DNA of 64,000 nucleotides from Zootoca vivipara (lineage: Eukaryota): contig NC_083276.1 in NCBI RefSeq assembly GCF_963506605.1, positions 71,114,001 to 71,178,000 of the forward strand. Reading direction: 5' to 3'. Positions within the stretch are counted from its first letter, which is position 1, and each line of letters begins with the position of its first letter. Below, one piece after another: positions 6,001 to 62,277 of this stretch. Both the position numbers and the translations under genes were made by a program. The notes beneath the pieces were generated by a model, which worked only from the letters and a program-made list of their open reading frames with translations, was not told where the DNA came from and did not search any database.

Positions 6001-7035
6001 TGTAACTTTATTGCATGAAATTAACACTCTGATACACCTTCGATTACCTATTTTCCATTTCATTCCACATACACTTGTAACTGCCCAACAGGCTGTCCAG
6101 CAAATGGAACAGAAGAAGTTACAGCAAGGACATCCTGCTTCGGGACCAGGTGGAGAACTGAAATTCCAGCCACGTATGTAAATTATTCTCTTTCTCTCTC
6201 ACACAGACATATTATTGATGATGGTGTTCATTATTTGTGAGAGAAACTATTCATGCCCACAGTGCAATACAGAACCAAACTTATAGCTTGGCACTTAATA
6301 TTCTGTTGCAAATAAGAGAAGGAGCCTGCCAACCCATTAGATTGGAATGTAACATGTTTGAACACTTGGATGCCTGAAACTGAACCCCTACTCATATACT
6401 TTCCTTGCCAGATAATTCAAATGAAAGAATCTATCATGTTTTACTGTTAAATCGGGGCACCTTTCATACAAGCTCCAAATATATCTCTTAGCAGCTGTAC
6501 ATGAAAGAGAGAGAGGTAATTTGGGCAAGTGTGTCTTTGTATGTGAGAGGGGGAAAAGATGCATTTTCATAAAAGAGAGCCAGCTGGATACCATTGAAAA
6601 TGGAGCTCTAAAATCTTACTGCACATAAATGAACAAGCAAATACCGCAGACCTTCTTTGTTCTCTGAAAGGTGATTTTATGCAGGGGGTGGGGTGAATCT
6701 AGTACCATAAATATGTGGAGTTCTGCTCCAATAACCTTTAGGGATGTTTTGACTATATGTGATTTCAGCTTTATGTATAACCCCCTGTAATGTAACCTGC
6801 ACGTAAAATTTGAGTCTACTATAATATGTAAAACCACACTTTCTGAGATTTGGATTACCAGGCAATTGCTCAACAGAACTAACCTTTGTTTTCCGTATTT
6901 TGTGTTACAGCTGCACCACAGCCAGTTGGAAATGTTCCAAATCATCCTGCGGGAGGCAGTCAGCCTTTACCACCAGGAAGCATACCAGTACAAGAAACAG
7001 CTGCAGGATCAGATCACGTTCAGTCTCACCCTTAA
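1..7035 (+). CDS. NUCB2: Nucleobindin-2 (nesfatin precursor), 3' part; join(1..91,2221..2279,2949..3041,3696..3785,5304..5474,6092..6173,6911..7035)
   Basis: Spliced translation [96 protein letters not shown]...ELKFQP matches nucleobindin-2. All introns are GT-AG and the frame is continuous; synteny with NCR3LG1/KCNJ11/ABCC8. Confidence 0.97.
1496..2172 (+). mobile_element. Solo LTR (677 bp) in a NUCB2 intron
   Basis: Termini TGTGA...TCACA; 5-bp direct repeat TGCTA at 1491-1495 and 2173-2177; internal AATAAA at 1805-1810. Confidence 0.8.
2221..2279 (+). CDS. NUCB2: NUCB2 exon, EF-hand 1 loop ([20 protein letters not shown])
   Basis: Acceptor ctttttatag| and donor |gtatgt; 59 nt restores phase 0. 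Confidence 0.95.
2949..3041 (+). CDS. NUCB2: NUCB2 exon, acidic region ([31 protein letters not shown])
   Basis: tgttttag| ... |gtgagg; 93 nt. Confidence 0.95.
3696..3785 (+). CDS. NUCB2: NUCB2 exon, EF-hand 2/GBA motif ([30 protein letters not shown])
   Basis: aaaag| ... |gtaatc; 90 nt. Confidence 0.95.
3836..4050. mobile_element. Palindromic hAT-type MITE (TIR TAGGGTTGCCAG-like)
   Basis: ~100-bp near-perfect inverted arms; 8-bp TSD TCCCTGAC at 3828-3835 and 4051-4058. Confidence 0.9.
5304..5474 (+). CDS. NUCB2: NUCB2 exon, leucine zipper/coiled coil ([17 protein letters not shown]...QRQELQQ)
   Basis: gttaag| ... |gtacca; 171 nt; within ORF 5142..5489. Confidence 0.93.
6092..6173 (+). CDS. 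NUCB2: NUCB2 exon ([27 protein letters not shown])
   Basis: caacag| ... |gtatgt; 82 nt. Confidence 0.93.
6911..7035 (+). CDS. NUCB2: NUCB2 terminal coding exon ([41 protein letters not shown])
   Basis: Strong acceptor ttttgtgttacag|; phase-1 continuation is open to TAA at 7033-7035. Confidence 0.8.
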
Positions 7036-10620: not shown

Positions 10621-11422
10621 CAACAGATGCATAGGTACATATCTCTGTTATTTCCAGTGCAATACTGTATTTGTATGAAGAATGTTGTTTCACCCTTACT
10701 TTGTATACATTAGGTATAAATCAGATTAAATTGAGTTTATAGTCAGTTGCTTTGGGTCCTCTATGACCATCTTCTTCCAGTGATTGTTGTGGCTGAATTA
10801 TGTTTGGCAGAATTAAAAACAACAACAACACTAGATCATAAACAAGGATGCTTAACATTTAGTATTATATTTATTACATTTATTAGTTGGTTACTACAGA
10901 AAATGTGTTGAAGCAACAAACAACTGTAGAAAAACACAGAGATTATTTGTTGTCAATGTGAGACAATAAACCAGAAGCCTATGGGGGAAGTGAGACTTGG
11001 AGCATGAATTGATTACTCAGGGGGCTATGGGTTGAGATTTTATTTAAACTCAAGATTAGGCTTAAATTGAGCTGTCAACCATTAGTTAGATTTGCTGAGG
11101 TGCTGCGCCCGTTTGGTTTTCTGTTTACCTTCTATATTTCAACCCGGCTTACTCGCTCTCCTCAGCTGCCTGAGAAATGAGGATTTCTTTTGACGCTACG
11201 GATACAGGCTTCGAAAGTTTATTGCCTAGTACTCAGCTGCGTACAGGAGCTGTTTCTTGGTCGGAGTTTTTATTTATTTATTTATCCCAGTTTAACTACT
11301 CAAGCTGTTGAAGTTGACTTTTGACCATGCGAAGCTTCCGTGCGATTTTAAGTTTCGCGGTCGCCCCCTGTCCACTATCTGCGTCAGGTCCAAATACAAC
11401 CAAAGCTCACAATATCATAAGC

Positions 11423-11462
11423 GAAAGCGAAATCTTTCATAGGAGAAAGCCATTTCCAGGAA
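11423..11462 (+). promoter_or_regulatory. IRF-E/ISRE (GAAAGCGAAA) plus GAS (TTCCAGGAA) pair
   Basis: Exact matches to GAAANNGAAA (11423-11432) and TTCNNNGAA (11454-11462), 55-95 bp upstream of the ATG. Confidence 0.6.
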
Positions 11463-11515
11463 CCTGCCGAGTCCTTCGCGAGGAAGGAAAGGGCAGCGCC
11501 TCACCAGCGAGACCC

Positions 11516-11606
11516 ATGGATCGGGGAGGTGGGTTGGCGGCCCGCAGGTGCCTCCTGCTCGTCTTCTCGGTGTTCCTCCGTGGCGTCGTCATCCTCCAGC
11601 CGGCAG
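11516..11606 (+). CDS. NCR3LG1: NCR3LG1-like exon 1, signal peptide (MDRGGGLAARRCLLLVFSVFLRGVVILQPA)
   Basis: ATG in CpG island, basic n-region plus hydrophobic core, phase-1 donor G|GTAAAG. Confidence 0.8.
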
Positions 11607-14600: not shown

Positions 14601-17600
14601 CAGAGAGAAGGCAGTTAAAGAAAGGCTCTGTTGTGCTAGCTTCTCTGTACCTATCTGTACGATTTCTCTTTGCTAAAAGTGTTTTGTTTTGTTTTTTTAA
14701 AACCAACCCCTTAGTATCCTTCCACCACTCCTTTACTCAATCTTCTGCTTAAAAGCCACAGAATCTTTTGCAGTAAGTATAAGCACTTGGCATTTTCCTC
14801 AGAAACAGGCTGGTAACCAGTGAATATATTTTAATAACATATTCAAAATAACCAGTCACATTTATAGCCAGAGTCAGAAGGCTATATCCCAGCAGGCTGC
14901 ACAACCACTTGACAGAACATGTCTTTCTTCCCTTCACATCTGTGCTTGGCCTAAATTAGACAGACTGCAAGTTTGGAAAAAGTTTGCAACTTTATTCTGC
15001 TTGAGACAACTTAACTGTTTTACTAAAGCAAGTGTAACCAACATGATGCCTTGCAAATGTGGCTGGGAACCAGCTCCCATCAGCCCTAGCCAGCTATGCC
15101 AACAGCCATGGATGGTGGGAGACAAGCAACATCTGGAGGGCACCACGCTGTCTACTCTTGTGTTAAAGAATTCATTGAGTCACAAAATCCCCTCTAGCAA
15201 GGGGCATCTTGCTCACTCATGTTGTAAAAAGTTGCAGAGTAATAAACAGTGTAATGTTGTACACGCAGATCCTGCTATCCACCCACTTGTTATCCACCAG
15301 TTCACTTATCCAAACATAAAGAATTATGCCCAAACCTTGCTATACACTTTGCAGCTTCAGATATCTGAGCAACTGGAGCTTGCCCACTTCCTTACTTGTT
15401 GTGCTTTGCTGGTTGGCGGCAGCCATTTTTGAGCAGAAACCACGGTGAGAGAGAGAGATCAGACAAATCCCTTTTCCTTTTCCTCTTGCTGGTTGACTGC
15501 AACCATTTTGAGAAGAAACCATGGCAGGAGGGGGAGAGAGAGCACTGATTCCCATAGCAATTAATAGACAATGTTAGCCCAATACTTACTTAATGAACAA
15601 TTTCCAGGGAATGCATTGTGGGTGGATAGTGGGACCTGCATGTATAGGAAGATGAATGTGTAGATAAACCTGGTTTAAGAAAGATGATTAGGTACTTTCC
15701 AACTATCTGATTTCTGCATTCAGGGGTAGTCAGTGTGGTGCTCTCCAACTGTTTTGGATTATGACTCCCACCATCCCTGACTGCTGCCCATACTGGCTAG
15801 GGCCAGTGGGAGTTGCAGTCCACATCATCGGAGAACACCAGGTTGGCTACCACTGATTTATATTATATGGGAGGAACTCAACATTGCACCCTTCTGGTCA
15901 TTCAGCGCAAGCATTTCTGATTGCCAGGTAGTACAACCCCCCTCTCCTCCTCCACCTGTGCAGGGTTTTTTCCCAACCCTCCAGAGCAATCTCAGCTATA
16001 GCATCCATGACAGAAGGCCATCCAACCTCTGCTTAAAAACCCCCAAGGAAGGAGAGTGCACAACCTCCCTAGGGAGACCAGTCGTTCGTGACTGGTCTTA
16101 ACTGTCAGGGGTCTTTTACCTTTTTAGGCTAAGGCAATTTCTGTGTCAGTTTAGGAAAAAACCTCCTGTTTCGCTTATTTTTCAACTGATTGGACTTATT
16201 TTGGTATCAAAGTAAAGGTAATTGTGATCTCTTTCAAAATAAGGTATAAAATAAGGTATCAAAATGGTATTAAGTGCCACAGAAAAGGGCCACCGACCAT
16301 TCAATGGGAAACAAAAAGCTATTTTGTTTCCCATACATGTAATATGGGCAGTGATGAATCATAGCCTCCTGCTGTTAGAAAGGTCAAAAGACTATTTGCA
16401 ATAATGCTATTTTTTTCTTTATGAAGAATCTCTGAAAGTGACAATGGAAAGTCGGATGGTGGCGGTCTTGGATATAGATGTGATGATACCATGTGAGATC
16501 TCTGAATACAGTACTCCAGAGCTAAAGATCACAAACATTGCTGTTGAGTGGTATTGGAAGGCCTCTTCCAAGGAAGTGGAAAATATAGTATACACCATTG
16601 TTTCTGGAGTGCCTACATCTTATAGAAACGGTGCAAGAATGGATGAAAGTGAACTAAAAAAAGGCAATGCTGCACTTTTCCTCCCCCAAATACAGATTAG
16701 TGAAGAAGGAATATACAGATGTTCTGTGACTGTCACCCCAGTTTCAGATGAAGGAACCACTGTTCTAGAGTTAATTGGTAAGTATTTATGTTGTACAAGT
16801 TTGTAGAAAACTTACAGAGAACGAACTTGTACATTTCAGAATTTCCCGGTAGTTTTAAGGTCTAAGTAAGCATTATATAAGGAAATGTATGTGATATCAC
16901 CCATCATTAGAGAAAAGTCACTTTGCAAGACAGTAATTTAGAACAGAGAACTATGGGGGTGGGGTGCTTAGTCCTTTTCGCCAAGCACCAAAATACATTC
17001 CAAGCTGCTTCAGTCCCCCCCCCCCGTGGGAGATGCAGGTTCTAAATTGTAATAATCCTATGTATGTATACCAGTGAAATTTGTTCTGTATCCTTCAGTG
17101 TCAAAATGCTATGAATAAATAGCAACAAAAATAACAAAGCAGAGGAAGAAAAAAAAATACCTTCATATCAATGGTGGGGAAAAATAAACCAGCTGGTATT
17201 TTGAAGGACCTGGGAACATAAAATGCCCCTCCAGGTCCGCCATGTACTTTTCTGCTTTTTCCATCCAGTTGTGCAGAGTCGCTCGTAACTCTAGTTTTGC
17301 CCAGTTTTGGTATTCTCCTGGAGTCCTTTCTTCAACTCTTTCCCTCCACCATTATTTCCCCCCAAGTTCGTTCTTGTTCATTTCTATTACCACCAAGGCT
17401 CTTGACCAGCCTTCCCTCCTTCCCACCCATAGCTCATAGCTCCTCTTGACCCACAAAACACCTTCCTCAGGACTTCTCTTCTGTGCCTCTTGCCCCAACA
17501 TTCTCCTTCTACTTAAATAACCCTCACCCCAGGTTTTTAGTTTAGACCATGTCCTTCTGAGAAATCAGGAGTATCATCTATGACTTTCACTTCAACTTGT

Positions 17601-18067
17601 ATTGGATTTTAAGTGCTCTTTGTTGGTTTGGAAACCAGTTTTTGTCTGAAAAAACTGTATAAAAATGCAGCAAAACCAGGAAAGAAATTGACACTTTTTA
17701 TTATCTCCATGCAGCTCAGCCTTCTATAAAGCTGTCTCCCAGGACAGTTGAACTAGAAAATGGCAAGGAGAAGACCCTGTCATGTACAGTGAATAAATTC
17801 TATCCTCTTTCGATTGAGGTTCATTGGGAGAAAAAATCTGAACATGGCAATAATGAAGTTGTACCTGCAGATGATATTTGCACAGGGGTACCTGTGAAAA
17901 ATGGAGATGGCACTTTCAATGTAACCAGTAAACTGGGGCTACAACCATCTTTACAGGATAATGGAAATGTCTATAGTTGTGTTGTGGGACACAAATCATT
18001 TTCCATACGGCAGGCCTTCAATGCCACTTTGATAGTAACAGGTATTCCTTCTGTTGACCTTTTCTGC

Positions 18068-18099
<32 letters not shown>

Positions 18100-21000
18100 G
18101 TGGCATAGCTGCCAAGTTCTCCCTTTTTTTTTAAGGAAAATTCCCTTATGCTGAATAGGCTTCCTCGTGAGAAAAGGGAAAACTTGGCAGCTATGAATAG
18201 TGGGTCACATCCAACTGGTGTACTTCCATGAGTGTAGGGGCTTTTGATCCAGAAGGAGAGGGGATATTTGCCCACACACCCTGGAGCCTTCAGCAATTTC
18301 CACTAATTCTGCCCTATGTTCTGAAATGTTCTCCTTTCTCCAAAGATTCATATTGTACTTACAAATGCATTAGTCTTTGGGACTTCCATGCAGGGGCATC
18401 ACAAGGAAAGGGATAAAAAATATTGTAATGCCTTTATACAAATCTATGGGAATCTTGTGTACAGTTCTAGTCGCTGCATCTCAAAAAGATTATTGTGGAG
18501 CTGGGAAAGGTGCACGAAAAGGGCAACCAAAAATGATATTAGGGATGGAACAACTCCTTAATGAGAAAAGGTTATGGCACTTGGGGCTTTTTTTTAAAGG
18601 CAAATACGAGGAAGGGACATGTTAGAATTGTTTAAAATTATGTGTGATATGGATGGAAGTTGGTTCTCCATTAACACAATATGGGATCATCCAGTGAAGT
18701 TGACTGGTGAGAGGTTCAGGACAGACAGAAAGAAGTACTTTTTCATGCAACACATGCTTAAGTTACAAAATTTGCTGCCATGTAGTGGTCTGTTGATGGC
18801 CATTAGCTAAAATGGGTTTACAATAAAAAAATTCCTTCAGTAGCACCTTAAAGACCAACTAAGTTTATATTTTGGTATGAGCTTTTGTGTGCATACACAC
18901 TTCTTCAGATACAATGTGATTGGACACAATTGTGTACTATAAGCCCACCAATGGCTACCTCCAATATCAGAGGTGGCATGCCTCTGAACAGAACTTTCTG
19001 GCAAACGACAACGTGAGAGGTCTTTATGTCCGGTCTGGAAACCTTATAGTCATGCTAAATCAAATTAGTTTTTGGGCTGCTCCAGCAGGACTTTTCTTAT
19101 GTGCAGTTGGAATAAATGAGGCTAAAATGACTTTGCCACAATTGAGCAGCTGAATATGAAATATTACTTGTCATCAAAAGGTTGCAACAAGGCTGAAACA
19201 TTTTGCTATTTTGTGTGATAAGTAACAAGAACAATTTTTCTCTCTTTACAGAACCACCACCAAATTTTATCTGGTTGGCCGTGATACTTGTTTTATTATT
19301 ACTTGGTATGATTCCTGTAATTCTGTACATCAAGTACTTTAAGAAAAGTAAGTAATGGGAAGCATTTAATTAATTAATTTATTAATTTTTTAAAATTAAG
19401 ATAATTCTATACTATTCATCAAAGGTGGTTAAGGGTGGTTTACAAAAATAGATTAATATGAAACATAATACAGGCACGTATTCATTATTATTAAAGTAAA
19501 ATTAGTATTTTTGTGAAATCTTAATCTTTGGTAAACTTAGGTCTGAAATGACAGTATTCAAAAAGTCCTAGGCACCAGTACACCAGGCACAAAAAAATCT
19601 TGCTTGTGGTTAAGAATTTTGACTAAGTTTTCTTTTAAGTGGCTAAGATTTCTTTGCTGAATCAATTAGGGAAGGGCCATACCTCAGTGATAGAGCATCT
19701 GTTTTGCATGTAAGAGGTCCTAACTGGTTAGTTCTAGCTTCAGCACTATCTTGGAGATGGATGGCTATCAGTGACAGAGTGGTGGCCCCAGATTTATCTG
19801 CTCACTAGAAAAGACTCATGGAGTCTATACAACTGAAGCTACTATTTGACATTGCAAGTACTCAATTAGCAACCAATAACATCCACATAAAATAAGTCCT
19901 GGAAGAGACCTTGAAGGTCATTTAGTCCAAGCCCCTGTCACAGATAAAGCACCCTTTCTCAGCTCTTTTGCTTCATTCTACATGATACAGAAATAGCACA
20001 CTGTGCAAGATTCTTAATTCAGGACTACAAAGCTAACCAAAATCCTTGGGTGGGATATGTACAAAAGGAGTAAGAAGGAATGCTTAATCTGTGGCTACCC
20101 TGCACTGAGTGGGGAGTGGGGAGTTGGACTGGATGATTAAGGTGTTAAGGAATATAGCTAGTGTGTTAATTCCATTAGTGAGGAAAAAGCTGACTCACTC
20201 TGATTCATTTCCAAAATGCATCTGACTCAATTTTACTTCTTTATCAGTTTACTGGGCAGATTTGGTTGCCATGTGTCCTCTTATTCCAGGACACGTCCTC
20301 TTTTTCACGGGTAAAATTTCTGTCCAGGTGGATTTTTAAAATTTCCCCAAATGTCTCTGGCTATACTTTCTGGATGAGACATAGACTTGTTTTCCTCTTC
20401 TCTTCCCCTGTCCCCCTCAGCATTATATCACAGCATCTATATCCTACATATAGTAGAGGTATTTGAAATGAAAGTTGTCATAGTGTCCTCTTTGTTGCTC
20501 TTCAAAATATGGCTACCTTAGTAAGCATGTTACTCTGTGTATAAAATGGCTTGGATTAGACAGTATTGGTTGTGGGTTGGTGGCTGTTATCAGGAAGGAG
20601 TGAGTCATTGTGAAACACTTTGAGGAGAGCTCATCTGAAAAGAAGGCTTGGGGGATTGTCAGTCTTCAGGACTCTGGAGAACTCTAAGCTGTTGCAGGAC
20701 TCTCTGTAAATTGACTTAGAACTTGCATGTGGATTTTGCTCAGCAAGGATTTTGAATTACACAAACCCCTCTGGGACCAAAGATAGAAAAGCCTTTGTGT
20801 AACCTGTATATAGTGTGTAAATATAGAGTGTGTATTTTGTGTGTGTCAGGTAAAACAACTGCTTAAACAAGAACTGTTTTGGGTTGGTGAGCTAAGCAAC
20901 TTTACTGAAGCTTCCAGGGCACACACACAGAGAGCAAGATATATAGATTGAAGATAGCACCCCCTATACGGTTCTTTTAAACTCTTATTATTCTGTGGGA

Positions 21001-24000
21001 AAGGTACACATAGCCAGTACACTTCCATCCGTTATGTGTTAATGGGTACTCATAACATATCATGGTGGCTTCTGCTTAAGCCGGAACTAATCACAACATA
21101 GGATATCTACTCATATCCATCCATATTGTCTAAATAACACCTCTGTTGAGGGTGTGACCTTTAACAGCTGCAAAAACCAGCATTTTGGAGCTTGAGAGAA
21201 CATGAAACTTAATACAATACATTAAGTTGTTTTTGTTCACTGAACTGTCACTATTTAATGTCTTATTGCCACAGAGGAATTATGGAAGGAATGATCTTCC
21301 AAATCAGAAAGATTCTTTTTGCAAATTCATTTGCTGCAAAAATCTTTTTAAAATCCCTGCTCCTACCTTCTGGCTTTCTATCATATCACCCCCAACACTT
21401 GAAAGCTAAACAGTCTTTGTTAAACTGGCTTCTTAAGTATGGCTGTTGCTATACTCAACTGAACCTCAAACAAACTCTTCCTAGTCTCATGGAGGCTTCA
21501 TCCAGGACTGTCTTTTTCTTCCAGTTATGCTTTACCTGATCTGCACTGCAAGCAGTCTAGATAGGGATTGTGCCACTTGATCTTTGATACAGCATCTTGC
21601 ATACATTGTTCTTCACCACGTAGCAGTCACTGGCATTTGCAATAGACTGAATGTGATAATTACAAAAAGGAAAAATTCAGTCATACCTCAGTTTAAGTAT
21701 GCTTCGGTTTGAGTACTTTCAGTTGAAGTACTCCGCGGACCCGTCTGGAACGGATTACTCCACTTTCCATTACTTTCAATGGGAAAGTTCGCTTCAGGTT
21801 AAGTACGCTTCAGGTTAAGTACAGACTTCCTGAACCAATTGTGTACTTAAACCGAGGTACCACTGTAATGCTTTGTTGTAAACTGCAGTAAGAATGTTCC
21901 TCTTACAGATGACTTGTTATAATAGTGTCAGTTGAAACACTGCTACAAGTTTCTACACCTGAAGTTCTTCTTGAAACACTCATTTGTGAGTGTTTTTGTT
22001 TTTTGTTTTGTTCTTTATAGTTCAACCAGGGAAATTTTCAGCAATTAAAAATAAAGAATTGAAACATTTGGAAGAAACACTGGTGGTGTTCTTGCTGCAA
22101 GGCTTTCGTCCAAAGCGTTTAGAAATAGTTTTTTTCTTAAAACTCCCAAGCTGGAATGAAAAACAGGAAATATACTCTTGGAATACTATGACAGCCAGCA
22201 ATCCTGAACACGGAGAAGATACACCTCTTATCATCACTGGAAAAGGAGAAGAAAGTTCTGATCTTGTCATGAAGTTGAAGACCATGTTTACTTTTGATCC
22301 AACTTTGCAAGTAAAACAAAGGCGCACTTTTGACGTTTCCTGCAGTGTCAACATAGTTCCAGATGTAAAGCTGCTGAAGGAGTTTGAACTTACACTTGAA
22401 GTTAGACACGAGGCCTTCCCAGATTGTTTGTCTACTGAAACAATATCATTTAAAGTCATAGGTAAGTAGGAAATATGGGCTGAAATGATCACTTAGAATA
22501 ATACTATTTCACTGGCTATTATAAGAATTCTGTCAACAGATGAAAGGTGAGAGAGCTGCATGAATGCAATGGGATACTTTCTGCTGCCATAGCCAATGAT
22601 GATACATAAAGGGAAACAATGCAGGATTGTAGCTAAACTCTTTGATCAGTCTACAAAAAGTGAATGATAAGATGGGAAAGCAGCATAGGTGGCTTGTGTG
22701 GAGATTATTTCTCTTAAACACGTTCAGTTTGACTAGTTCCTTATAACTTGTGAGCTCATACAAAGGGCGAAGTGATGACCTTTAAAGCATTTCATGGTAT
22801 AAGGCCTGCATGGGATTCAGATCAGAAATTCATATGTGGACAAAAGAAAGTCCATACTTATTATCTTCTCCTGTTGCATTCTACTTACTAATAATATCAC
22901 TTTTTTGGTATTTATTTATTTACAGAATGTACTCCCAAAGTCTCCAAATTTGAATGTGAGCCTCCTGTACCAGAGTGTGGGAAAATCATCACATTATCTT
23001 GTTTAGTAGAAGATTTCTGCCCACGGGAGTGTGGCATTTGTTGGCTAAGAGGCAATAATGAGCCTTTGGATGCTACAAGTAACACAGAGAAGCCACAGCT
23101 GGACCCAGTGTCAAATCTGTATTGCAAGAAAAGCAGAGTATCCTTTATACCTCAACCAGAAGACCACGCGGTAGATTTTATTGTTCAAATCAACCATTGT
23201 CAAAAAGTTATAAGACATAGTTACCCACTCCTGTTAAAAGGTGAGTACTTGGCAAGTTCTTCTGCAATGAACAACTACTTGTGCTTCCTGTCTAAATAGT
23301 TTATATAAAACTGGAGATACACAATTGAGTTGTTTCCTGTATCTGTATTTGTTGTGGGTCTTTGATCACTTGTAGTGAAAGAGATCACTTTTATCTCTTT
23401 GTCATTAGGTGATGCTATCGTGGGTTTGTCCCATGGAAAACATGACTCAGAGAGCCCTTGCACAGAAGTGTCAAGTCCTTCATAAAATTAGAGTTTAGAA
23501 CCTTTTCTGGGTGAAATCAGCAATGCATGTTCATAGCTGATATATGCATCTTCTCAGGAAAATTATAGTGTCAGCTAGTGGCAAATTGCAAACATGACAA
23601 GCATTATGGTGAAGCCAATTTAAAACATGAATCAAATGAGAAATTGGAGCTCTCATCTGTTTCAATCCAGAAGGTCAAAGATGGCACACTTTGTATTCCA
23701 ACCAGGATAAAACAGCCACGTGTAATCATATACATTTAATAACAAATAATATATATATTATATTATATATAATTATATATTATATATGGGTGTCAGATAT
23801 ATTAGAATATGTTACAGACTGCCAATGCTCTCCTGCCATTATATGCATACTGTTATCATTTCTTCATATACCATATCGTGCGGATTTGAACTAGTTAAAT
23901 CTGCAAAGCTTTTAATTTGTAATTTTTGTGAATTGCTGCGATTTCACAAAAGATCTGACTCCCAGAGTTCATTGGGAGAAGCCATAACATCTAAACTAGG

Positions 24001-27000
24001 CAAATCTGGTAGTTTTGACAAGACTGTGGTGTTAATTGCTCATTCTATCCTATAATTTCCACAAGGATTGTAGTGAAACTGAAAGGATAAGCAACTGAAA
24101 CTGAAACTGAAAGCAAACCTATCTCTAGCTCTTTTTTGAGAGAGCCTGTGTGTATATATCCATGTGTGTATCCACTGAGAAAAGGAGTTCATGCATCATA
24201 TGACATAGGCTGTAGTCCATGAAAATTTATGCCATGATGCATGTGTTATAAAGTGGCACTAGGTTTGGTTTTGCTTTAACATACTAATGTGACACCCCAT
24301 CTGCAATTTGTCACTTCTGATTTACTGCTTTACAATACCGGATGTACTAGCATTCTTTGAATTTAAACTAATGTTTTCAATTCATTTTGTTTTATCTGCA
24401 TCTGCATTTTTTAGGTTACCCCAAAGTTACAGATATTACATGTGAACCAAATGATCCTAAATATGGAACTAAATTGTCTCTAACCTGTAAAGTCACAGAT
24501 TTCTTTCTTAGTGACATAAAAATTAAATGGCTTGATGGGGGTATTGAAATAAGTGAAGGTGTGGACACAGAGAAGCCAGTCGAAGGCTCAAATGGCTGTT
24601 TGAAGTTGTCTTCTAAGCTCCAGCTGATACCAACTGCTTTGGATCATAATAAGTTCATTACTTTCAGTGTGACATATGGTGACCTGAAAAAGCCCATTGT
24701 TAGAGATGTGTATCTAAAGCTCCCAGGTATGTACTGAGAATCCTTTGGGTTCTTTCAACTTTTGGCAAATGGCAATTTGAGCTTGTTTATTTAACAAAAT
24801 TTAAACCACTTAATTTTAAAAATGTCGGTAAGTGATTGTAAAAATGTCTAAGTGGTTTACATAAAATAAAATGTATATTAAATTGAGGATAAATGTAGTA
24901 TTCTGATATGAATCGGTTCCCTTTGCAACAAGGGAGGTTTGACATATTTGTGTACTCTGATAGGTGTATGTCTCTACTAGCAGTCATGTGTCCCTAATAT
25001 CTGCCAGTTTTGTTTGTTTTTTTGAAAGTCCAAACTATCTTGCAGACTTGCACTTAGTAGTTCTGAAGATTACCTGATAGAAAAATCAGGTAAATCTAAT
25101 AAAAAACTAAGAAAGCAAAAACATATGTTCACACGTACACTGATGGTACTACTTCACTCCAAGTTTTTTTGAAAATCAAAAATCATATTATCGGATGTAT
25201 ATTCATTGAAGATGAATATCCTGGCAACCCTGCTGATCTGAAGTGTGATTTAAACAATGGCACATTTAAATGAACTTGTCTTTCATAAAATTCCTTTATT
25301 TTTTTAGAATAAAGTTATAGAATAGGCTCACATTGGGGAAGGGGAGTAGAACATCCAGGTTTAGTCCCTAGCATTTCCAGCCAGGGCTGGAAATATCCCC
25401 TGCTTGAAACTGTACAGAGCTACTGCCAGACACTCTAAACAATACTGAACTAGATGGATTAATGGACTGACTTGGTATTAGGCATATTTTTATGTTCCTG
25501 TTGTCTTGTATTGTTACTTCAAGTCACATCCTTTCCTTCCCATGTAGTTCACCGCCCTGAGATGTCTGAAATAAAGAAAACACCAATGCAAAACAGTGAG
25601 AGCATCTCTTTGGAAACTGTCATATCAAATTTTGCACCTTGCAACATAAGAGTGACGTGGTATGAAGAATGGGAAAAAATATCTGAAGACAATCCCAGGA
25701 ACATTCAGATTGGAGAAAACAAGTTAGGTTATTTTGTAAGCAAATTACAGGTTAGTCCAAAAGGCAGAGACTCCAAAGAGACAATTAGATGTGAAGTTTT
25801 TCACCAAGCGACACAGGATTTTAAAGAAAAAAGCTTTGTGTGGGAAAGCAAAGGTAAGAACATTTTTTTTTAATCTTTTCAGCGCAGAATGTACAGAATT
25901 TATGTAAGGGATTCAGACATCTCCCTTCAAAAAACACTGCTAATGGGGGAAAAGGTGATTCCTCTTCTCAATTAGCATTTCCATTACTTAGGACTCAGCT
26001 ACATTAGTACCGTAAAAAACACACCAGTTTTTTAAATCCATTATAAAGATGCAACACCAGGTGGCACTGTAGAGCACAAAACCTTTTTCCTTTTGTTTTT
26101 TCTTTTGTTATAACAATATAATTTATAATTTAATTATAGCATTCCCCCCCCTCGGTCACGGCTGAAAGGTGGATTTGTAGTCTTTTTGGGTAGCTATGAT
26201 ATTTCTGGTGACATGTGATAGAATTCCCCAATCATTGGGAAGAGGGGTATTTAACTTAAATTTTATTTTAAGTCTTTGAACACTGGAGTGACTCAAAGAG
26301 TAGAAGCACTTATGACTCAAAGAGCAGGAACACTTACAGCTGCTTTTTCAAAGTGTTCTCCAGTTTCTCCTCACCCTAGTGCATTGTGTTGCAATGCATT
26401 GGTTCTTTTCCCACCGAAATTACACACCACCTGAGATAGTAGTTTGAGATTTTTTTCTCCAGCTCTCAGTAAGTGCCTTACTGAGCTAGTGCTAAATTAA
26501 CTTTGCTTGCCAATATGGACCATTGAATTGTAACAGACCTCAGGTGTACTTGGGGGCTGAATCAGCACAGCCCATGGTCTGTACAACAATGTAGGTTCTG
26601 CTTTATTGCTGGCCAGGATGTTTTGTGATTAGTCAGGTCAGTACTTTTGGTGATTCCGAGGCCTGTGGGCATCTAGCTCCCACATATGTTTGGCTTTTGC
26701 TGGGGCTAAGCTGTCTATATTGATATGCATGGAGAAAAGGGAGCCTTTGTAAATTGATAGTGCTGTTAGGGGGTGAGATTGTAGAATGAATCAGCATGAA
26801 AACATCCTGAACTATACCTGTTTCCTTCCAGTGTAAGTAATAGTGTTGTGATGAATGTCAGCTGTAATTTTATTTGTGGTAGATGCTTTTAAATGATAAA
26901 ACTGGGAAAAATGAAGACAGTGATATAGGCTTTCAGTTTGTTTTCATTGTAGCAGGTCATCTAGAAATTCAGCAGTGCTCTTTGAGGATGGCTCATGATT

Positions 27001-28959
27001 TTCTCATATTCAATAATAGTATTCAGAAGACTAGCATATCTGGTTGTTATGAATACAAAAATCAACATAATGCTCTTACAACACACCTGGTGTTAGAAAT
27101 TTTGTCTTGAATTCATCAGAGGAGAACTAGCTTTTGAATTTTTCCATGAATATTGCTCTGACTGTATCCCCCCCCCCCCGCAACCTCCCAAATGCTACCC
27201 TTGGAAGACAGTTGGCTAATTGCAGTTGAGAGCATGTTGATTCAGTTGAGTAGCATTTCTGTTGTAAGTATTTCTGTTACGTGACATGATGCCTGCCCAA
27301 GGCCTAATATGTTATTTCTTCTTTTAAAGAAGATTGCTGCGATAGCCTTGACAGAATGTTGACTTCACCAGTGAGCCAAAACCATGTAGGACCATTAATA
27401 AGTGAGTATTGCACCTCCACATGTAGGTAAAATGCAGGTACATTACACATTGACCCAGTGATTTCATATCCTGGTTTGTAGTCCCAGTTAAAATCAGAAA
27501 ACTGTTTAGATGTTTCTTGAAAGAGGCAGTGGGAGAACGTTATAAACCATTATTTATTAAAGTGAGATCATTACATCTCAACCAGACCATTAAGTTACTC
27601 TAAACCTTATTTTCATAAGGATGATTTGAAAGATCATCTTAGTCCATTCTGAAAAACTTGTACGCAGGGATCTGCAAACTTTCTTTTGGCATAAAAGCCA
27701 GCCACTATTTGTGGCCACAGTGACCACTTCAGCCCTCCACAAGGAAACAGGAAAGGGTGCAGAAGAATTCCTCATGTCATGCTTATATTTATGCCATCCC
27801 TCTACTGTTTAATGTATGACAATATAATTATATACCACTGGATAGTTTTAAACAATCATAAAATAATAAAACAATAACAGGTTTAACAAAACAACTATGT
27901 GAAACATTAGTTTTAAAGCAAGTAGTCTATGAATTTATATGCCAACATTAATATCTTAATAACTGAGTCTCTAACAACCGATAAAACATACTGAAGACAT
28001 ATGAAAGACATTCATATATGCTTAACTGAACACATGAAAGTCCATCCCGACAAAACTACAGATTGGGGCTTGAAGATAAAATTGTAACCTTGTATTTATT
28101 TAGGGACCTGGCACATCCCAAATAGTAAGAGTTTTAATATCCTGACTTGGCATAACTGCCCTCTTTCCAGCTATCCTTTTACGGTACCTAGGTGTTTATT
28201 TTCTCCATCTCATTTGCCCTCACTCTCCTGTCCTGGTTCAGTTCTTCATCTTCCATCCTCAACAGATTCTCAACAGCTGTCACTTACTTTGACTCCTGCC
28301 AGCAATCCATTACACTCCACTGCTGTCAGTCAGTCATTCATTCTTACAATACGGACCACTCTAGTTCTCCAGTGGCTTGCTATTGCTTTTTATTCCTCTG
28401 TCCTTAATTGCCAATGTCTTTGACTGTAGCTTCCATTCACAGCACCAAGCAGCGGCTGGGTAGGGAACAGACATAATGCAATGTGAACAGAAAGTTCAAA
28501 TTATCTGACTTGAAGAAAATATGCAAATGATTGGAAACTGAACATCACAATCACAGACAGTTAATGTTAGCGAGATGCCTCTTCCAGGTATGTACTTCAA
28601 GAGCAGTTTCCTATTCGGTTTCCCATTCCCTCTCTCTAGATTCTAAGCTCACCAGTGAAGAACCAGTTCAGCCTATGAAGATAGAATGTGTCACCAGCAA
28701 CCCAAAGGCAGGCGAGAAGGTGACTCTTCGCTGTTTTGTACCTGGAATAAGAGCAGAGGATGCCAATGTTTCCTGGTTTAAAGGAGTATATCCAGTTGAT
28801 GATAAAATAGAGAATGCAAACTGTGGCGATGGATCTGGTTTTATTTCAGATGTGGTCATTACAACTGAAAAAGATAAGAAAAAATATGAAATCAGATGTG
28901 AAGTTTATGTAGATGCCAATTATGAAATCTTGGAAGAAAACTTTTATTTAGAACTTTGA
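11516..28959 (+). CDS. NCR3LG1: B7-H6 (NCR3LG1)-like type I membrane protein of ~876 aa: SP-IgV-IgC1-TM followed by five C1-like Ig domains; join(11516..11606,16427..16777,17715..18041,19252..19347,22021..22461,22926..23240,24415..24726,25548..25853,27330..27401,28640..28959)
   Basis: All internal exons are phase 1-1 with GT-AG ends; the total of 2631 nt is one open frame. The IgV resembles B7-H6 (LKV.M...W.WK...G.A.L.LP.IQ..E.G.YRC.V.VTP). It sits at the NCR3LG1 position between NUCB2 and KCNJ11. Confidence 0.82.
11654..11700 (+). repeat. (GCT)n followed by (AAACT)n microsatellite
   Basis: Directly visible. Confidence 0.9.
12242..12377. mobile_element. Palindromic hAT (Charlie-like) MITE
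   Basis: TIR CAGGCATCCCCAAACT..; 8-bp TSD GTCTGGAT on both sides; near-identical copy at 38831. Confidence 0.88.
12410..13275 (-). mobile_element. Degraded LINE (L2/CR1 clade) 3' fragment
   Basis: Minus-strand pieces such as LKEWVCSLEVLLDSLLSPEAQV and VPHLWNALP resemble an L2/CR1 RT C-terminus; AT-rich tail near 12410. Confidence 0.55.
13355..13604. mobile_element. hAT-Charlie-like non-autonomous DNA transposon
   Basis: CAGGGGTAGGCAACC...GGTTGCTGAGCCCTG; TSD CTATTGAC/CTGTTGAC; related copy at 44550. Confidence 0.8.
15721..15856. mobile_element. Older diverged copy of the palindromic hAT MITE family (also ~15030-15160, ~39010-39150, ~63660-63785)
   Basis: CAGGGGTAG...GACTCCCA...TGGGAGTTGCAGTCC...CTACCACTG. 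Confidence 0.55.
16427..16777 (+). CDS. NCR3LG1: NCR3LG1-like exon 2, IgV domain
   Basis: Canonical C (IPC), W (VEW) and EEGIYRC; FG-loop VTVTP as in B7-H6; atgaag| ... G|gtaagt. Confidence 0.92.
17715..18041 (+). CDS. NCR3LG1: NCR3LG1-like exon 3, IgC1 domain
   Basis: TLSCTVNKFYP..IEVHW...NGDGTFNVTSKL...YSCVVGH, a canonical C1-set; sequons NVT and NAT; atgcag| ... G|gtattc. Confidence 0.92.
18069..18095 (+). repeat. (TG)n microsatellite
   Basis: Directly visible just downstream of the exon 3 donor. Confidence 0.9.
18104..18195. mobile_element. ~90-bp hAT-type mini-MITE (TIR CATAGCTGCCAAG)
   Basis: 8-bp TSD AATAGTGG; three more copies in the window. Confidence 0.9.
18395..18810 (+). mobile_element. 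CR1 LINE 3' fragment
   Basis: Frameshifted IVMPLYKSM..CVQF..LKKD..ELGKV.KRATKMI.GMEQL, typical of the CR1 ORF2 C-terminus. Confidence 0.65.
18822..18911. mobile_element. Penelope-like element terminal fragment
   Basis: AATAAAAAAATTCCTTCAGTAGCACCTTAAAGACCAACTAAG...CACTTCTTCAGATA; near-identical to 54510-54599. Confidence 0.6.
19252..19347 (+). CDS. NCR3LG1: NCR3LG1-like exon 4, transmembrane segment (EPPPNFIWLAVILVLLLLGMIPVILYIKYFKK)
   Basis: tctctttacag| ... A|gtaagt; 96 nt, phase 1-1; ~22 uncharged hydrophobic residues followed by KYFKK. Confidence 0.88.
20528..21057 (+). mobile_element. Possible old solo LTR
   Basis: TGTTA...TAACA termini and LTR-like composition, but no clean TSD. Confidence 0.3.
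21678..21865. mobile_element. Tc1/mariner (Tigger/pogo-like) MITE
   Basis: CAGTCATACCTC...GAGGTACCACTG followed by TA; relatives at 46469 and 52310. Confidence 0.7.
22021..22461 (+). CDS. NCR3LG1: Exon 5, degenerate C1-like Ig domain with an insertion (post-TM domain 1)
   Basis: Long polypyrimidine tract and ttatag|; 441 nt open; GFRPKRLEIVF and LEVRHEAFP resemble the C1 motifs GFYP..I.V.W and C.V.H..L; G|gtaagt. Confidence 0.8.
22926..23240 (+). CDS. NCR3LG1: Exon 6, Cys-rich C1-like Ig domain (post-TM domain 2)
   Basis: tttacag| ECTPKVSKFECEPPVPECGKIITLSCLVEDFCPRECGICW...DFIVQINH...LLLK G|gtgagt; 315 nt. Confidence 0.82.
24415..24726 (+). CDS. NCR3LG1: Exon 7, C1-like Ig domain (post-TM domain 3)
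   Basis: ttttttag| GYPKVTDITCEP...LSLTCKVTDFF..DIKIKW...LSSKLQLIP...YLKLP G|gtatgt; 312 nt. Confidence 0.85.
25548..25853 (+). CDS. NCR3LG1: Exon 8, C1-like Ig domain (post-TM domain 4)
   Basis: catgtag| ...ISNFAPCNIRVTW...FVSKLQVSP...IRCEVFH... G|gtaaga; 306 nt. Confidence 0.83.
27330..27401 (+). CDS. NCR3LG1: Candidate exon 9, short linker (EDCCDSLDRMLTSPVSQNHVGPLI)
   Basis: Polypyrimidine tract and NAGNAG acceptor (taaag|aag|), donor A|gtgagt; 72 nt, phase 1-1, no stop. Confidence 0.55.
28640..28959 (+). CDS. NCR3LG1: Exon 10, terminal Ig-like domain (post-TM domain 5) and stop
   Basis: tctctctag| ...GEKVTLRCFV..ANVSWFKG...YEIRCEV...NFYLEL TGA. Confidence 0.82.
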
Positions 28960-35133: not shown

Positions 35134-36916
35134 TATGGCTCTATGCTACTGAGTCGAGGCCGAAGCTCAACAGACTGATAGCAAGGTTGCCAGCTCTGAC
35201 GCAATGGGAGTACATGTGCTCCTGCGCCTTAGCTTCCATTCTATCCCCTCTGCTTGGAGGAAGAGAAACTCTTCATTGTTCACAGGTGACTCCTGCCTAT
35301 CCTCACACAGTTGTGCCATGCAAAGTCAGCCATATACTGTAGATCTTTCAGAGGAGGGGTGTTCTCTGCTCTTCTGCATGGTGTTGGTATAGGGTATGCA
35401 GGATAGAGCAACAGTCCATCTTTTGTCCCGCTCTTGATCTAACGGATCAAGGCAAGTTACGTTTCTGGTTTAAAGTATGTATCTAGTGTACATGAGGATC
35501 TTTGCAGCAGCAGAACTCAATGGACAGTTGCTGCTGTCAACAGGGAGAACAGATAGGCCTGGATTCAGTTCCCTACACTCCAAATAGATTAGTGCTGTCA
35601 GAGTTGGCACAGCTGATCTTCTCCTTGGCACTGCCCACGTCTTCAGCCTTAGGTGCTGGGTGTGGGCATTGTTGATTACCCCACATTTCACATAGCACTT
35701 CTTGCATTCAAATACACAATCTAGAAAGGAGATCTGTTTCCACAAGCCTCCTTCCTTGGGTATATCACCCTTCCTGGATAGAGTTATAGTGTAGCAAAGT
35801 CTGGGTTTTTCTTTCATTATATTGGTATTTAAAAGCTCATATTTTTCTTTACTAAGAGAATCTGATGAAAAACTGATATAATTTTGCTTGTATTGTGTTT
35901 GCCTTTCCTCATTTGAATTCTTTTTAATCCCTTGATTACTAACCCATTGGGTGAGGGGAAGCTTTTGGTGGGATTGATCCTACCCTTCCTGCTGCCAGGA
36001 CTCTTGCATTTAGCAGGTGCATCATGGAGAGAAATCTAAAATCAACAGGCATGCAAATGCTGTGATGAGAGAAGCTTCAAAGAGCATAGAATTGGAAGGG
36101 ACTACAAAGCTCATCTAGTCCAATCCCCTGCAATGCAGGAATCTTTTTCCCAATGTGAGGCTCGTGCTCCACATTGTGTCCACATCAAGTGTCTCCACAT
36201 TAAGTGTCTCATGCTCAGTTGCAATGTTTCGCACAGGGAAAAAGGAAGTGGCAACTCCTTTCCTGTGTGAAATTAATTTTACATTTATGTTGATATTTGT
36301 GTGTGCTTTTTTGGCATCAAAACCACATTTCATAAAACCGCTGCCTAGTGCTTTCTTGCAATGGCATTTGTATTGCTTTTTAAGATTAGGTTAATATGAA
36401 TCACTGAACATTCCTCAAAGCATATTTGTGGCTTGAATTTAAAAGACCATTAATTTGAAATGAATCAAAAGTTATGTGATACAGTTCTCATTTTAGCATG
36501 AGATGGTACATTCCAAACCATTGTTCTTATTCAAATTACATGCCATTTATTAGAACCTTCGGAACTGATGTTTAAATCAATCTTATTTAAAGCACATTAT
36601 ATATATATTTCTTTTCTTCTTTGACATGTTCCCATTACATTTAGGGGATATATTTATCACAGGCATGATACATGGGCATTTGAGTCAATAAAGTCTATTT
36701 ATAATTGCTAAATGGTCTAAAAGAGTCTGAATCAATTTTAACAACAACAAAACAAAACAACAAAACAAAACAACAACAAACTGTGCAACTTGGCGTCTGT
36801 CTACTCAGAAGTACGTATTGCCAGGTTCTGTGGGACTCACTCCTGTGTAAGTGTGTACAGAATTGCAGTTGAAAAGCAAGTTGACATTTTTTTTTAATGG
36901 GCATGAGGTAGTCTTT

Positions 36917-37306
36917 GCTGATCGCCGAAGAATTGATGCTTTTGAATTATGGTGCTGGAGGAGACTCTTGAGAGTCCCATGGACTGCAAGAAGATCAAAC
37001 CTATCCATTCTTAAGGAAATCAGCCCTGAGTGCTCCCTGGAAGGACAGATCGTGAAGCTGAGGCTCCAATACTTTGGCCACCTCATGAGAAGAGAAGAAT
37101 CCTTGGAAAAGACCCTGATGTTGGGAAAGATTGAGGGCACTAGGAGAAGGGGACGTCAGAGGACAAGATGGTTGGACAGTGTTCTCGAAGCTACGAACAT
37201 GAGTTTGACCAAACTGCGGGAGGCAGTGCAAGACAGGAGTGCCTGGCGTGCTATGGTCCATGGGGTCACGAAGAGTCGGACACGACTAAACGACTAAACA
37301 ACAACA
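36917..37306 (+). mobile_element. BovB (RTE clade) LINE, 5'-truncated 3' end
   Basis: RRIDAFELWCWRRLLRVPWTARRSNLSILKEISPECSLEG...LEKTLMLGKIEG.RRRGRQR.RWLD; (CAA)n tail; flanking AGTCTT(T/C)GC repeat. Confidence 0.92.

Positions 37307-48085: not shown

Positions 48086-62277
<14,192 letters not shown>

What the first reader, a model, noticed from the sequence alone, without database searches (positions are those of the whole stretch)
19252..28959. B7-H6-like receptor with a chain of five Ig C1-like domains predicted to lie in the cytoplasm
Seen: after the signal peptide, IgV and IgC1 there is a clear TM exon (FIWLAVILVLLLLGMIPVILYI followed by KYFKK). The frame then stays open through phase-1 exons at 22021, 22926, 24415, 25548, (27330) and 28640. 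Each exon except the short linker encodes a C1-set-like domain, about 590 aa in total, with no second TM-length hydrophobic stretch. Established: type I topology and the positive-inside rule put this part in the cytosol. C1-set domains (Ig, TCR, MHC, tapasin, B7-H6 C domain) are normally extracellular or luminal. Inference: this is an NK-ligand orthologue with an intracellular multi-Ig scaffold, an unusual architecture that may represent an uncharacterised reverse-signalling or sensor system in non-mammalian tetrapods. I cannot exclude that orthologues are already annotated as 'uncharacterized' proteins.
Basis: partly seen in the sequence, partly recalled or inferred. Interest (0 to 1): 0.9.

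Follow-up and report, generated by a model that had tools for sequence, protein, structure and literature searches.

The report
Lizard B7-H6 with post-membrane Ig chain
This is the common lizard's version of the NK-cell ligand B7-H6, and after its membrane anchor it carries five antibody-type domains that should sit inside the cell, a layout kept from sharks to marsupials, lost in placental mammals, and not described in any paper I could search.

Summary
All ten exons have clean AG/GT borders and are phase 1. RNA-derived contigs from three samples splice IgC1 to the TM exon, the TM exon to 22021, and onward in single contigs. NCBI's Zootoca vivipara NCR3LG1 models match every exon 100%.

The gene lies between NUCB2 and KCNJ11/ABCC8, and its V-C1 ectodomain matches human B7-H6 best. 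So it is the B7-H6 orthologue.

Three post-TM exons pass the Pfam C1-set cut-off and the last is borderline. The 147-codon exon is an Ig-like sandwich only by structure prediction. There is one TM only, with positive charge on its C-terminal side.

The same order of post-TM domains occurs in chimaera, rays, coelacanth, amphibians, turtles, alligator, squamates and, as two domains, marsupials. Ruminant B7-H6 lacks it. The tail is as conserved as the ectodomain, has no conserved N-glycosylation site, and most of its domains lack the canonical disulfide.

A cytoplasmic location is the likeliest reading but is not shown. Isoforms that skip the TM exon are annotated in Varanus, a shark and a ray, and would put the chain outside the cell.

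The gene model is already public. The topology appears undescribed, but two key B7H6 evolution papers could not be read. The scan's other notes concern this same stretch.

The parts
11516..11606 (+). Exon 1: start codon and signal peptide (30 codons plus 1 base, phase 1 donor). NCBI models start at an upstream in-frame ATG at 11327.
16427..16777 (+). IgV exon of the ectodomain
   Evidence: Pfam V-set 28.3 bits. Best PDB match is human B7-H6, E 8e-16, then CD276.
17715..18041 (+). IgC1 exon of the ectodomain, with two N-x-S/T sites
   Evidence: Pfam C1-set 59.5 bits. Human B7-H6 E 1e-16. RNA joint 18037->19248 in X1, X2 and X3.
19252..19347 (+). Transmembrane exon: a 22-residue hydrophobic stretch followed by KYFKK
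   Evidence: KD19 3.05. Present in the RNA contigs of X1 and X2, with an IgC1-to-TM joint in X1-X3. Flank charge over 22 orthologues is -14 before and +49 after the TM.
22021..22461 (+). Post-TM unit 1 (E5): Ig-like sandwich with an inserted loop and helix. No Pfam hit. It is the family-specific marker domain.
   Evidence: AF2 pLDDT 82 with 7 strands. Foldseek hits are Ig-like domains, TM 0.45-0.58.
22926..23240 (+). Post-TM unit 2 (E6): C1-set domain, cysteine-rich (9 Cys), no F-strand Cys
   Evidence: Pfam 24.6 bits. Cys columns.
24415..24726 (+). Post-TM unit 3 (E7): C1-set domain closest to Ig heavy-chain constant domains. Phe sits at the F-strand Cys position.
   Evidence: Pfam 45.5 bits. 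PDB IgA/IgG heavy chains E 5e-17 to 1e-9..
25548..25853 (+). Post-TM unit 4 (E8): C1-set domain without the B-strand Cys
   Evidence: Pfam 31.5 bits..
27330..27401 (+). Short linker exon, predicted disordered. A NAGNAG acceptor gives isoforms X1 and X2.
   Evidence: (pLDDT 27-32 over the Lacerta equivalent)
28640..28959 (+). Last coding exon (E10): C1-like domain with both canonical Cys. Stop codon at 28957-28959.
   Evidence: Pfam 20.9 bits against a cut-off of 21. AF2 pLDDT 85-94.

Best explanation
This is the Zootoca vivipara orthologue of B7-H6 (NCR3LG1) in what looks like the ancestral long form of the gene.

Shown:
- One mRNA encodes signal peptide, IgV, IgC1, a single TM helix, then five Ig-like domains (one divergent, four C1-type) and a disordered linker, about 590 residues in all.
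- This domain order is conserved across jawed vertebrates, and the tail is as conserved as the ectodomain.

Inferred:
- With a cleavable signal peptide, one stop-transfer helix and a basic cluster right after it, the main isoform is a type I membrane protein. Its V-C1 part faces outward as the NKp30-binding module, and its Ig chain lies in the cytosol, starting only about 5 residues from the membrane.
- In the cytosol the chain would act as a folded scaffold that does not depend on disulfides.

My committed guess at mechanism: it couples the state of the cell interior to the display, clustering or turnover of the NK ligand (inside-out control). This is how the B7-related butyrophilins use their folded B30.2 tail and how integrin beta-4 uses cytoplasmic FnIII domains. 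I give this specific function about one chance in three.

Placental mammals replaced the chain: human B7-H6 has a Gag-like tail, and ruminants have a short unrelated tail. Marsupials keep two of the domains.
For: Gene and splicing:
- Exon borders.
- Spliced RNA contigs joining IgC1, TM, exon 22021, exon 22926 and beyond.
- 100% match of every exon to NCBI XP_060131980.1.
- None of the listed Zootoca or Podarcis isoforms skips the TM exon.

Identity:
- NUCB2 upstream, KCNJ11 and ABCC8 downstream.
- The IgV exon is closest to human B7-H6.
- The model's ectodomain superposes on 3PV7/6YJP at TM 0.86-0.90, rmsd 2.2-2.8 A.

Folds:
- Pfam.
- AF2 full-length Lacerta model, pLDDT 80-93 in each post-TM unit.
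- E5 model and Foldseek.

Conservation:
- The E5-like domain always lies about 290-440 residues in, after V-C1-TM, in 21 library hits.
- Orthologues range from Callorhinchus to Alligator and marsupials.
- Per-domain identity Zootoca-Callorhinchus is 28-36% in the tail against 30-40% in the ectodomain.
- The C-strand Trp is invariant in E6-E8 and in 17 of 18 sequences in E10.

Topology:
- A single TM in the full-length orthologue models.
- Net charge -14 before and +49 after the TM over 22 species.

Reducing or unglycosylated environment:
- N-x-S/T sites are 1.60 times expectation with two conserved columns in the ectodomain, against 0.85 times and no conserved column in 470-900 residues of tail.
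- The canonical Cys is absent at the F-strand position of E6 in 30/30 sequences, replaced in E7 in 23/28, and absent at the B-strand position of E8 in at least 25/29.
- The E5 pair is broken on one side only in lacertids, colubrids and coelacanth.
Against: - No experiment or dedicated topology predictor was run. The location is inferred.
- Isoforms that skip the TM exon in frame are annotated in Varanus komodoensis (X2), Heterodontus francisci (X3) and Hemitrygon akajei (X6). In these the same domains would be luminal or secreted.
- Some tail domains keep both canonical cysteines very strictly: the extra domain that lacertids lack in 27/27 sequences, and E10 in most.
- E6 gained two further cysteines that mostly occur together in bony vertebrates. 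That pattern is what disulfides would produce.
- The species sampled are related, so the glycosylation-site and cysteine counts are descriptive, not statistics.
- One RNA contig (X2) carries an extra T at 22128 that would truncate the tail.
Confidence: 0.6

Rival explanations
1. The Ig chain does its work outside the cell. Skipping the 96-nt phase-1 TM exon gives a secreted V-C1-(Ig)n protein, a soluble multi-Ig NKp30 ligand or decoy. The membrane isoform with the chain in the cytosol is a second product whose tail has no role of its own.
For: - Exact in-frame TM-skip isoforms are annotated in a lizard, a shark and a ray.
- All exons are phase 1, so skipping is always in frame.
- Canonical Cys pairs are strictly kept in the extra domain (27/27) and mostly in E10, and Cys appear together in E6.
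- The first post-TM domain begins about 5 residues after the TM, as if the TM exon were a cassette set between Ig exons.
Against: - The TM-containing form is isoform X1 in every species looked at.
- It is the only form among the listed Zootoca and Podarcis isoforms and in the RNA contigs of three samples.
- There is no conserved N-glycosylation site in 470-900 residues of tail, while the ectodomain has two.
- Three domain types lack the canonical disulfide in nearly all species, and single unpaired core cysteines are tolerated repeatedly.
- Contigs drop rare variants, so a minor skipped form in Zootoca is not excluded.
Confidence: 0.22
2. In lacertids the tail is a decaying remnant. The gene works as V-C1-TM, and the downstream exons are carried along under weak constraint.
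For: - Lacertids have lost one whole tail domain present in all other groups, and lack the B-strand Cys of E5 and the E-strand Cys of E8.
- Annotated isoforms X3 and X4 drop the last domain.
- The X2 transcript contig has a +T at 22128 that gives a stop six codons later.
Against: - All tail exons are open, with intact splice sites.
- Zootoca-Lacerta identity is 90-94% in E6, E7, E8 and E10, against 86% in IgV.
- AF2 is confident in every unit.
- The +T sits in a run of 7 T in a single assembled contig and may be an error.
Confidence: 0.08
3. These are two genes, or an assembly or annotation artefact: a short B7-H6 gene ending after the TM exon, plus a separate downstream multi-Ig gene.
For: None found beyond the oddity of the architecture. 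Podarcis raffonei also has a separate 297-aa V-C1-only 'NCR3LG1-like' model.
Against: - Single RNA contigs cross TM->22021 with record-contiguous coordinates in two samples.
- There is no stop codon or polyadenylation-type end after the TM exon in frame.
- The same fusion is seen in more than 30 species, including a Callorhinchus UniProt entry, V9K7L7.
Confidence: 0.02

Closest known systems
Human B7-H6 (NCR3LG1), ligand of NKp30
   Same: - Same chromosomal neighbours.
- Signal peptide, IgV, IgC1 and a single TM.
- The ectodomain is about 35% identical and superposes at TM 0.86-0.90.
   Different: The human protein is 454 aa, with an intracytoplasmic domain homologous to Gag polyprotein that carries ITIM-like, SH2-binding and SH3-binding motifs (PMC2715080). 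The lizard tail is about 590 aa of Ig-like domains. Ruminant orthologues (388-402 aa) show no match to a profile of the tail.
Butyrophilins (B7-related V-C-TM proteins with an intracellular B30.2 domain)
   Same: A B7-type ectodomain joined through one TM to a folded intracellular domain that, in BTN3A1, senses a cytosolic ligand and changes what lymphocytes see outside. This is established knowledge and was not tested here.
   Different: The intracellular fold is B30.2/SPRY, not Ig. There is no sequence relation to this tail. Function by analogy only.
Integrin beta-4 cytoplasmic tail (four FnIII domains), and titin/obscurin Ig chains
   Same: Domain types best known from the cell surface are used as disulfide-free cytosolic scaffolds. 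The titin I65-I70 chain is the top Foldseek hit of the full-length model.
   Different: Those are FnIII or I-set domains. No cytosolic C1-set domain is known to me. The titin hit reflects a beads-on-a-string shape (TM 0.14-0.20), not kinship.
Ig heavy-chain constant regions (IgM, IgA, IgG CH domains) and shark UrIg2
   Same: A tandem array of C1-set domains, one exon each, all phase 1. E7 matches CH domains at E 5e-17 to 1e-9, and E6-E7 align to two consecutive C-mu domains.
   Different: Those arrays are N-terminal to the TM or secreted, are glycosylated, and keep the B-F disulfide. Here the array follows the TM.

Membership tests
B7-H6 / NCR3LG1 orthologue | IgV-IgC1 ectodomain closer to B7-H6 than to other B7 members | tested here: met
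   IgV exon: human B7-H6 E 8e-16 against CD276 5e-9 and PD-L1 4e-6. IgC1 exon: B7-H6 E 1e-16. Structural fit TM 0.86-0.90.
B7-H6 / NCR3LG1 orthologue | Conserved position between NUCB2 and KCNJ11-ABCC8 | tested here: met
   NUCB2 exon ORFs at 1.8-6.2 kb (+), KCNJ11 ORF at 42428-43600 (-), ABCC8 exon at 54.7 kb (-). The human gene order is from my own knowledge.
B7-H6 / NCR3LG1 orthologue | Type I membrane protein (signal peptide plus one TM) | tested here: met
   Hydropathy and flank charge. No SignalP or DeepTMHMM was available.
B7-H6 / NCR3LG1 orthologue | Binds NKp30 | not testable with these tools
   Needs a binding assay with lizard NKp30.
B7-H6 as described in human | Gag-like cytoplasmic tail with ITIM, SH2 and SH3 motifs | tested here: not met
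   The tail is Ig-like throughout. This is a feature of the human or placental form, not of the orthologue group.
Immunoglobulin C1-set domain (PF07654) | Profile score above the curated cut-off (21 bits) | tested here: met
   Exons 22926 (24.6), 24415 (45.5) and 25548 (31.5).
Immunoglobulin C1-set domain (PF07654) | Profile score above the cut-off, for exons 28640 and 22021 | tested here: inconclusive
   Exon 28640 scores 20.9, just under 21. Exon 22021 has no hit but a predicted Ig-like fold. In most other species E5 keeps a C1-like Cys pair.
Immunoglobulin C1-set domain (PF07654) | Canonical B-F disulfide cysteines | tested here: not met
   In Zootoca one or both are missing in E5, E6, E7 and E8, and both are present only in E10.
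Immunoglobulin C1-set domain (PF07654) | Invariant Trp of strand C and a beta-sandwich fold | tested here: met
   Trp in 30/30, 29/29, 28/28 and 17/18 sequences for E6, E7, E8 and E10. AF2 gives strands with pLDDT 80-93.
Immunoglobulin C1-set domain (PF07654) | Extracellular or luminal location (true of all described members) | tested here: inconclusive
   Predicted cytosolic in the TM-containing isoform. Would be extracellular in the TM-skipped isoforms of other species.
Cytoplasmic scaffolds of surface-type domains (integrin beta-4 type) | Folded Ig or FnIII domains demonstrated in the cytosol that bind cytosolic partners | not testable with these tools
   Analogy only. The homodimer test gave no verdict.

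The most novel reading that the evidence does not exclude
B7-H6 of most jawed vertebrates carries a conserved cytosolic arm built of C1-set Ig domains. This would be the first case of this adaptive-immunity domain type working inside the cell. It would make the NKp30 ligand a two-sided molecule whose display reports on, or signals to, the cell interior. Placental mammals lost the arm.
Probability: 0.45. Interest if true: 0.85.

Novelty: new variant of a known kind. Interest (0 to 1): 0.68.

Why it matters
C1-set domains are the hallmark of Ig, TCR, MHC and their partners, appear with jawed vertebrates, and are taken to be extracellular or luminal.

A chain of them behind the membrane anchor of an NK-cell ligand, conserved for some 450 million years and as tightly as the receptor-binding part, means one of two things. 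Either this domain type also works in the cytosol, or B7-H6 is made in two topologically opposite forms. Either would change how the NKp30/B7-H6 axis is understood outside placental mammals.

It also shows that the human and ruminant tails are derived, so work on human B7-H6 signalling does not describe the ancestral molecule.

The question is directly testable with tagged constructs in cell culture.

Tried and rejected
- Two separate genes: rejected by the spliced contigs and by the same fusion in more than 30 species.
- Second TM or re-entry: none found.
- Chance ORFs or decayed duplicates: rejected by Pfam, AF2 and conservation.
- Recent tandem duplication of the ecto C1 exon: rejected. The tail domains are only 22-35% identical to each other and to IgC1, and each has its own orthologue in chimaera and coelacanth.
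- Homodimer of the E6-E8 segment (complex prediction): no verdict, score 0.00, and the tool did not use my alignment. This is no evidence either way.
- Sequence search of exon 22021 against PDB: nothing.
- Atlas search of the tail: only generic C1-set clusters.
- Raw RNA run X13: essentially no reads on the exons, so no junction counts.
- Literature: eight full-text searches found no description of Ig domains in a B7-H6 tail. Flajnik et al. 2012 (PMC3709836), Ohta & Flajnik 2015 (PMC4594805) and Kaifu 2011 (PMC11114815) are not held, so prior mention cannot be excluded.
Exons were searched one by one by reference. Whole-protein steps used the database proteins P0048 (identical exon for exon) and P0001 (Lacerta).
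Full report
**What is in the sequence.**

I read every proposed exon border. The gene starts with a signal-peptide exon (ATG 11516, donor after 11606). It continues with IgV (16427-16777), IgC1 (17715-18041) and a 96-nt TM exon (19252-19347). Six further exons follow: 22021-22461, 22926-23240, 24415-24726, 25548-25853, 27330-27401 and 28640-28959, ending in TGA.

All internal exons are phase 1 on both sides, with good acceptor tracts and GT(A/G)AG donors. The TM exon has a 22-residue hydrophobic core (19-residue Kyte-Doolittle mean 3.05) followed by KYFKK. No later exon exceeds 1.14. The window contains no N.

**Is it one transcript?**

Contigs assembled from three runs of the same organism (X1-X3, three samples, two studies) lie on the exons only and skip the introns at GT..AG, so they derive from RNA.

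- X2 record 7 (2532 nt) is colinear with the end of IgV, IgC1, the TM exon, 22021-22459 and 22924-23242, plus 1260 nt further downstream.
- X1 record 3 (1562 nt) starts in the TM exon and runs through the next two exons plus 718 nt.

The TM exon is therefore spliced both to IgC1 and to the first downstream exon in the dominant transcripts. Contigs cannot show minor isoforms, and the only raw-read RNA run (X13) had almost no reads here.

Independently, NCBI's Zootoca vivipara NCR3LG1 isoform X2 (XP_060131980.1, P0048) is 100% identical to every exon. So the window is Zootoca vivipara and the model is already annotated. Isoforms X1 and X2 differ by a NAGNAG choice at 27330/27333. X3 and X4 use another last exon near 28448 and lack the final domain. 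X5 lacks the signal exon. None of the listed Zootoca or Podarcis isoforms skips the TM exon.

**Identity.**

NUCB2 exons lie upstream, and KCNJ11 and ABCC8 lie downstream on the other strand. This is the position of human NCR3LG1 (gene order from my own knowledge).

The IgV exon matches human B7-H6 structures at E 8e-16, ahead of CD276 (5e-9) and PD-L1. The IgC1 exon matches B7-H6 at 1e-16. The ectodomain of the AF2 model of the Lacerta orthologue superposes on 3PV7/6YJP at TM 0.86-0.90 and 2.2-2.8 A. I accept orthology with B7-H6.

**What the post-TM exons encode.**

Pfam C1-set (cut-off 21 bits) gives 24.6, 45.5 and 31.5 bits for exons 22926, 24415 and 25548. It gives 20.9 for exon 28640 and nothing for exon 22021. 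Exon 24415 matches Ig heavy-chain constant domains at E 5e-17 to 1e-9.

Exon 22021 has no sequence match in PDB. With an alignment of 31 sequences, AlphaFold2 gives a seven-strand sandwich with an inserted disordered loop and a helix (pLDDT 82). Foldseek places it among Ig-like domains (SYG-1, RAGE, VHH, MHC II beta; TM 0.45-0.58). In most other species this domain still has a C1-like cysteine pair.

A full-length model of the Lacerta orthologue has pLDDT 80-93 in all five post-TM units. It is low only in the signal peptide, around the TM, in the E5 loop and in the linker. The five units are 22-35% identical to each other and to the ecto C1, so they are old.

**Distribution.**

I searched exon 22021 against 1.84 billion cluster representatives. 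This gave 21 hits, and in the proteins I inspected the matched domain follows a V-C1-TM module, usually about 290-440 residues in.

The hits and a second search are NCBI or UniProt models named NCR3LG1 or 'uncharacterized'. They come from many squamates, turtles, Alligator (964 aa), Xenopus, frogs and salamanders, Latimeria (1179 aa), Callorhinchus (1106 aa, with several UniProt isoform entries such as V9K7L7), sharks and a ray. Five marsupials also appear, which keep only the first two tail domains.

Each lizard tail domain has its own best match, in the same order, in alligator, turtle, coelacanth and chimaera. Other groups have one to three more domains, and lacertids have lost one between E5 and E6.

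Ruminant NCR3LG1 (388-402 aa) has no match to a profile of the tail. Human B7-H6 has a Gag-like tail (Brandt et al. 2009, PMC2715080). No bird or teleost turned up, which the searches' limits do not let me read as absence.

Per-domain identity between Zootoca and Callorhinchus is 28-36% in the tail, against 30% (IgV) and 40% (IgC1). Between Zootoca and Lacerta, E6, E7, E8 and E10 are 90-94%, against 86% for IgV. The tail is thus under constraint comparable to the receptor-binding part.

**Inside or outside?**

For a cytosolic tail:
- There is a signal peptide plus one hydrophobic helix in the full-length orthologue models.
- Net charge in the 15 residues before and after the helix sums to -14 and +49 over 22 species.
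- N-x-S/T sites are 1.60 times the composition-based expectation in the ectodomain, with two conserved columns. They are 0.85 times expectation in the tail, with no column conserved in even 40% of sequences over 470-900 residues.
- The canonical F-strand position of E6 is never Cys (30/30). That of E7 is Phe or Leu in 23/28. The B-strand position of E8 is not Cys in at least 25/29.
- The E5 pair has been broken on one side only, at least three times.

Against, or at least not explained:
- The domain missing from lacertids keeps both canonical Cys in 27/27 sequences, and E10 mostly keeps both.
- E6 has extra cysteines that mostly occur together in bony vertebrates.
- Exact in-frame TM-exon-skipped isoforms are annotated in Varanus komodoensis, Heterodontus francisci and Hemitrygon akajei.

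The species are related, so these counts are descriptive. I put the cytosolic reading for the main isoform at about 0.6-0.7, and a functionally important secreted form at about 0.2. The two are not exclusive.

**Mechanism.**

Shown: architecture, splicing, folds, conservation.

Inferred: type I topology, with a rigid Ig chain starting about five residues below the membrane.

Guess: the chain binds cytosolic partners and links the cell's internal state to the display or clustering of the NKp30 ligand, or relays NKp30 engagement inward. This is by analogy with the butyrophilin B30.2 domain and the integrin beta-4 FnIII tails (established knowledge, not tested here). A homodimer test of E6-E8 gave no verdict.

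**Novelty.**

The protein models are public, so the gene itself is not new. Eight full-text searches found no paper that mentions Ig domains behind the TM of B7-H6. The two papers most likely to mention it (Flajnik et al. 2012; Ohta & Flajnik 2015) are not held. I rate it a new variant of a known kind.

**Limits.**

- Exons were handled one by one by reference, and whole-protein steps used the database proteins P0048 and P0001.

Noticed in passing
window 22128-22135 (exon 22021-22461): The X2 transcript contig has 8 T where the genome and the X1 and X3 contigs have 7. The extra T shifts the frame and gives a stop six codons later, leaving V-C1-TM plus about 45 residues. It is either a homopolymer assembly error or a natural truncating allele.
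   Followed up: partly
window 11327-11515: NCBI's Zootoca models start at an upstream in-frame ATG (11327), adding 63 residues before the signal peptide. Lacerta and Podarcis models start at the ATG equivalent to 11516, which has a better context and puts the signal peptide at the N-terminus.
   Followed up: partly
window 28448-28490: An alternative last coding exon, used by annotated isoforms X3 and X4, ends the protein after the linker and drops the last Ig domain.
   Followed up: partly
window 27328-27333: A NAGNAG acceptor at the linker exon explains isoforms X1 and X2, which differ by one Glu.
   Followed up: yes
window 22462-22925: The intron between E5 and E6 is only 464 bp. Other reptiles, amphibians, coelacanth, chimaera and marsupials have a further C1-type domain here with both canonical Cys (27/27). 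Lacertids have lost that exon.
   Followed up: partly
window 18074-18260, 18822-19008, 21627-22000: These intronic stretches have summed contig depths in the thousands to tens of thousands in the RNA runs, with many 'goes back' joints and loose ends. They behave as copies of abundant interspersed repeats, not as exons of this gene.
   Followed up: no
window 18066-18096: A (TG)n microsatellite lies directly after the IgC1 splice donor.
   Followed up: no
window 36851-37297 (+): A 148-aa ORF that looks, from my own reading of the translation, like the C-terminal part of a LINE reverse-transcriptase protein. It is a repeat fragment between this gene and KCNJ11.
   Followed up: no
window 1800-6200 (+), 42428-43600 (-), 54689-54961 (-): Flanking genes: the last exons of NUCB2; the single-exon KCNJ11 in a 57% G+C island, where the ORF list shows a long upstream extension from a TTG that is probably not translated; and a C-terminal exon of ABCC8.
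   Followed up: partly
protein P0079 (Podarcis raffonei, 297 aa): A separate 'NCR3LG1-like' model has V-C1 and then an unrelated Pro/Gln-rich end, with no TM or tail. It may be a partial duplicate or a soluble form in a sister genus.
   Followed up: no
proteins P0036-P0039 (Heterodontus francisci, 1405-1541 aa): The horn shark homologue repeats the E5-like unit about seven times after the TM (one search lists 7 matched stretches). The tail can therefore expand by tandem exon duplication.
   Followed up: no
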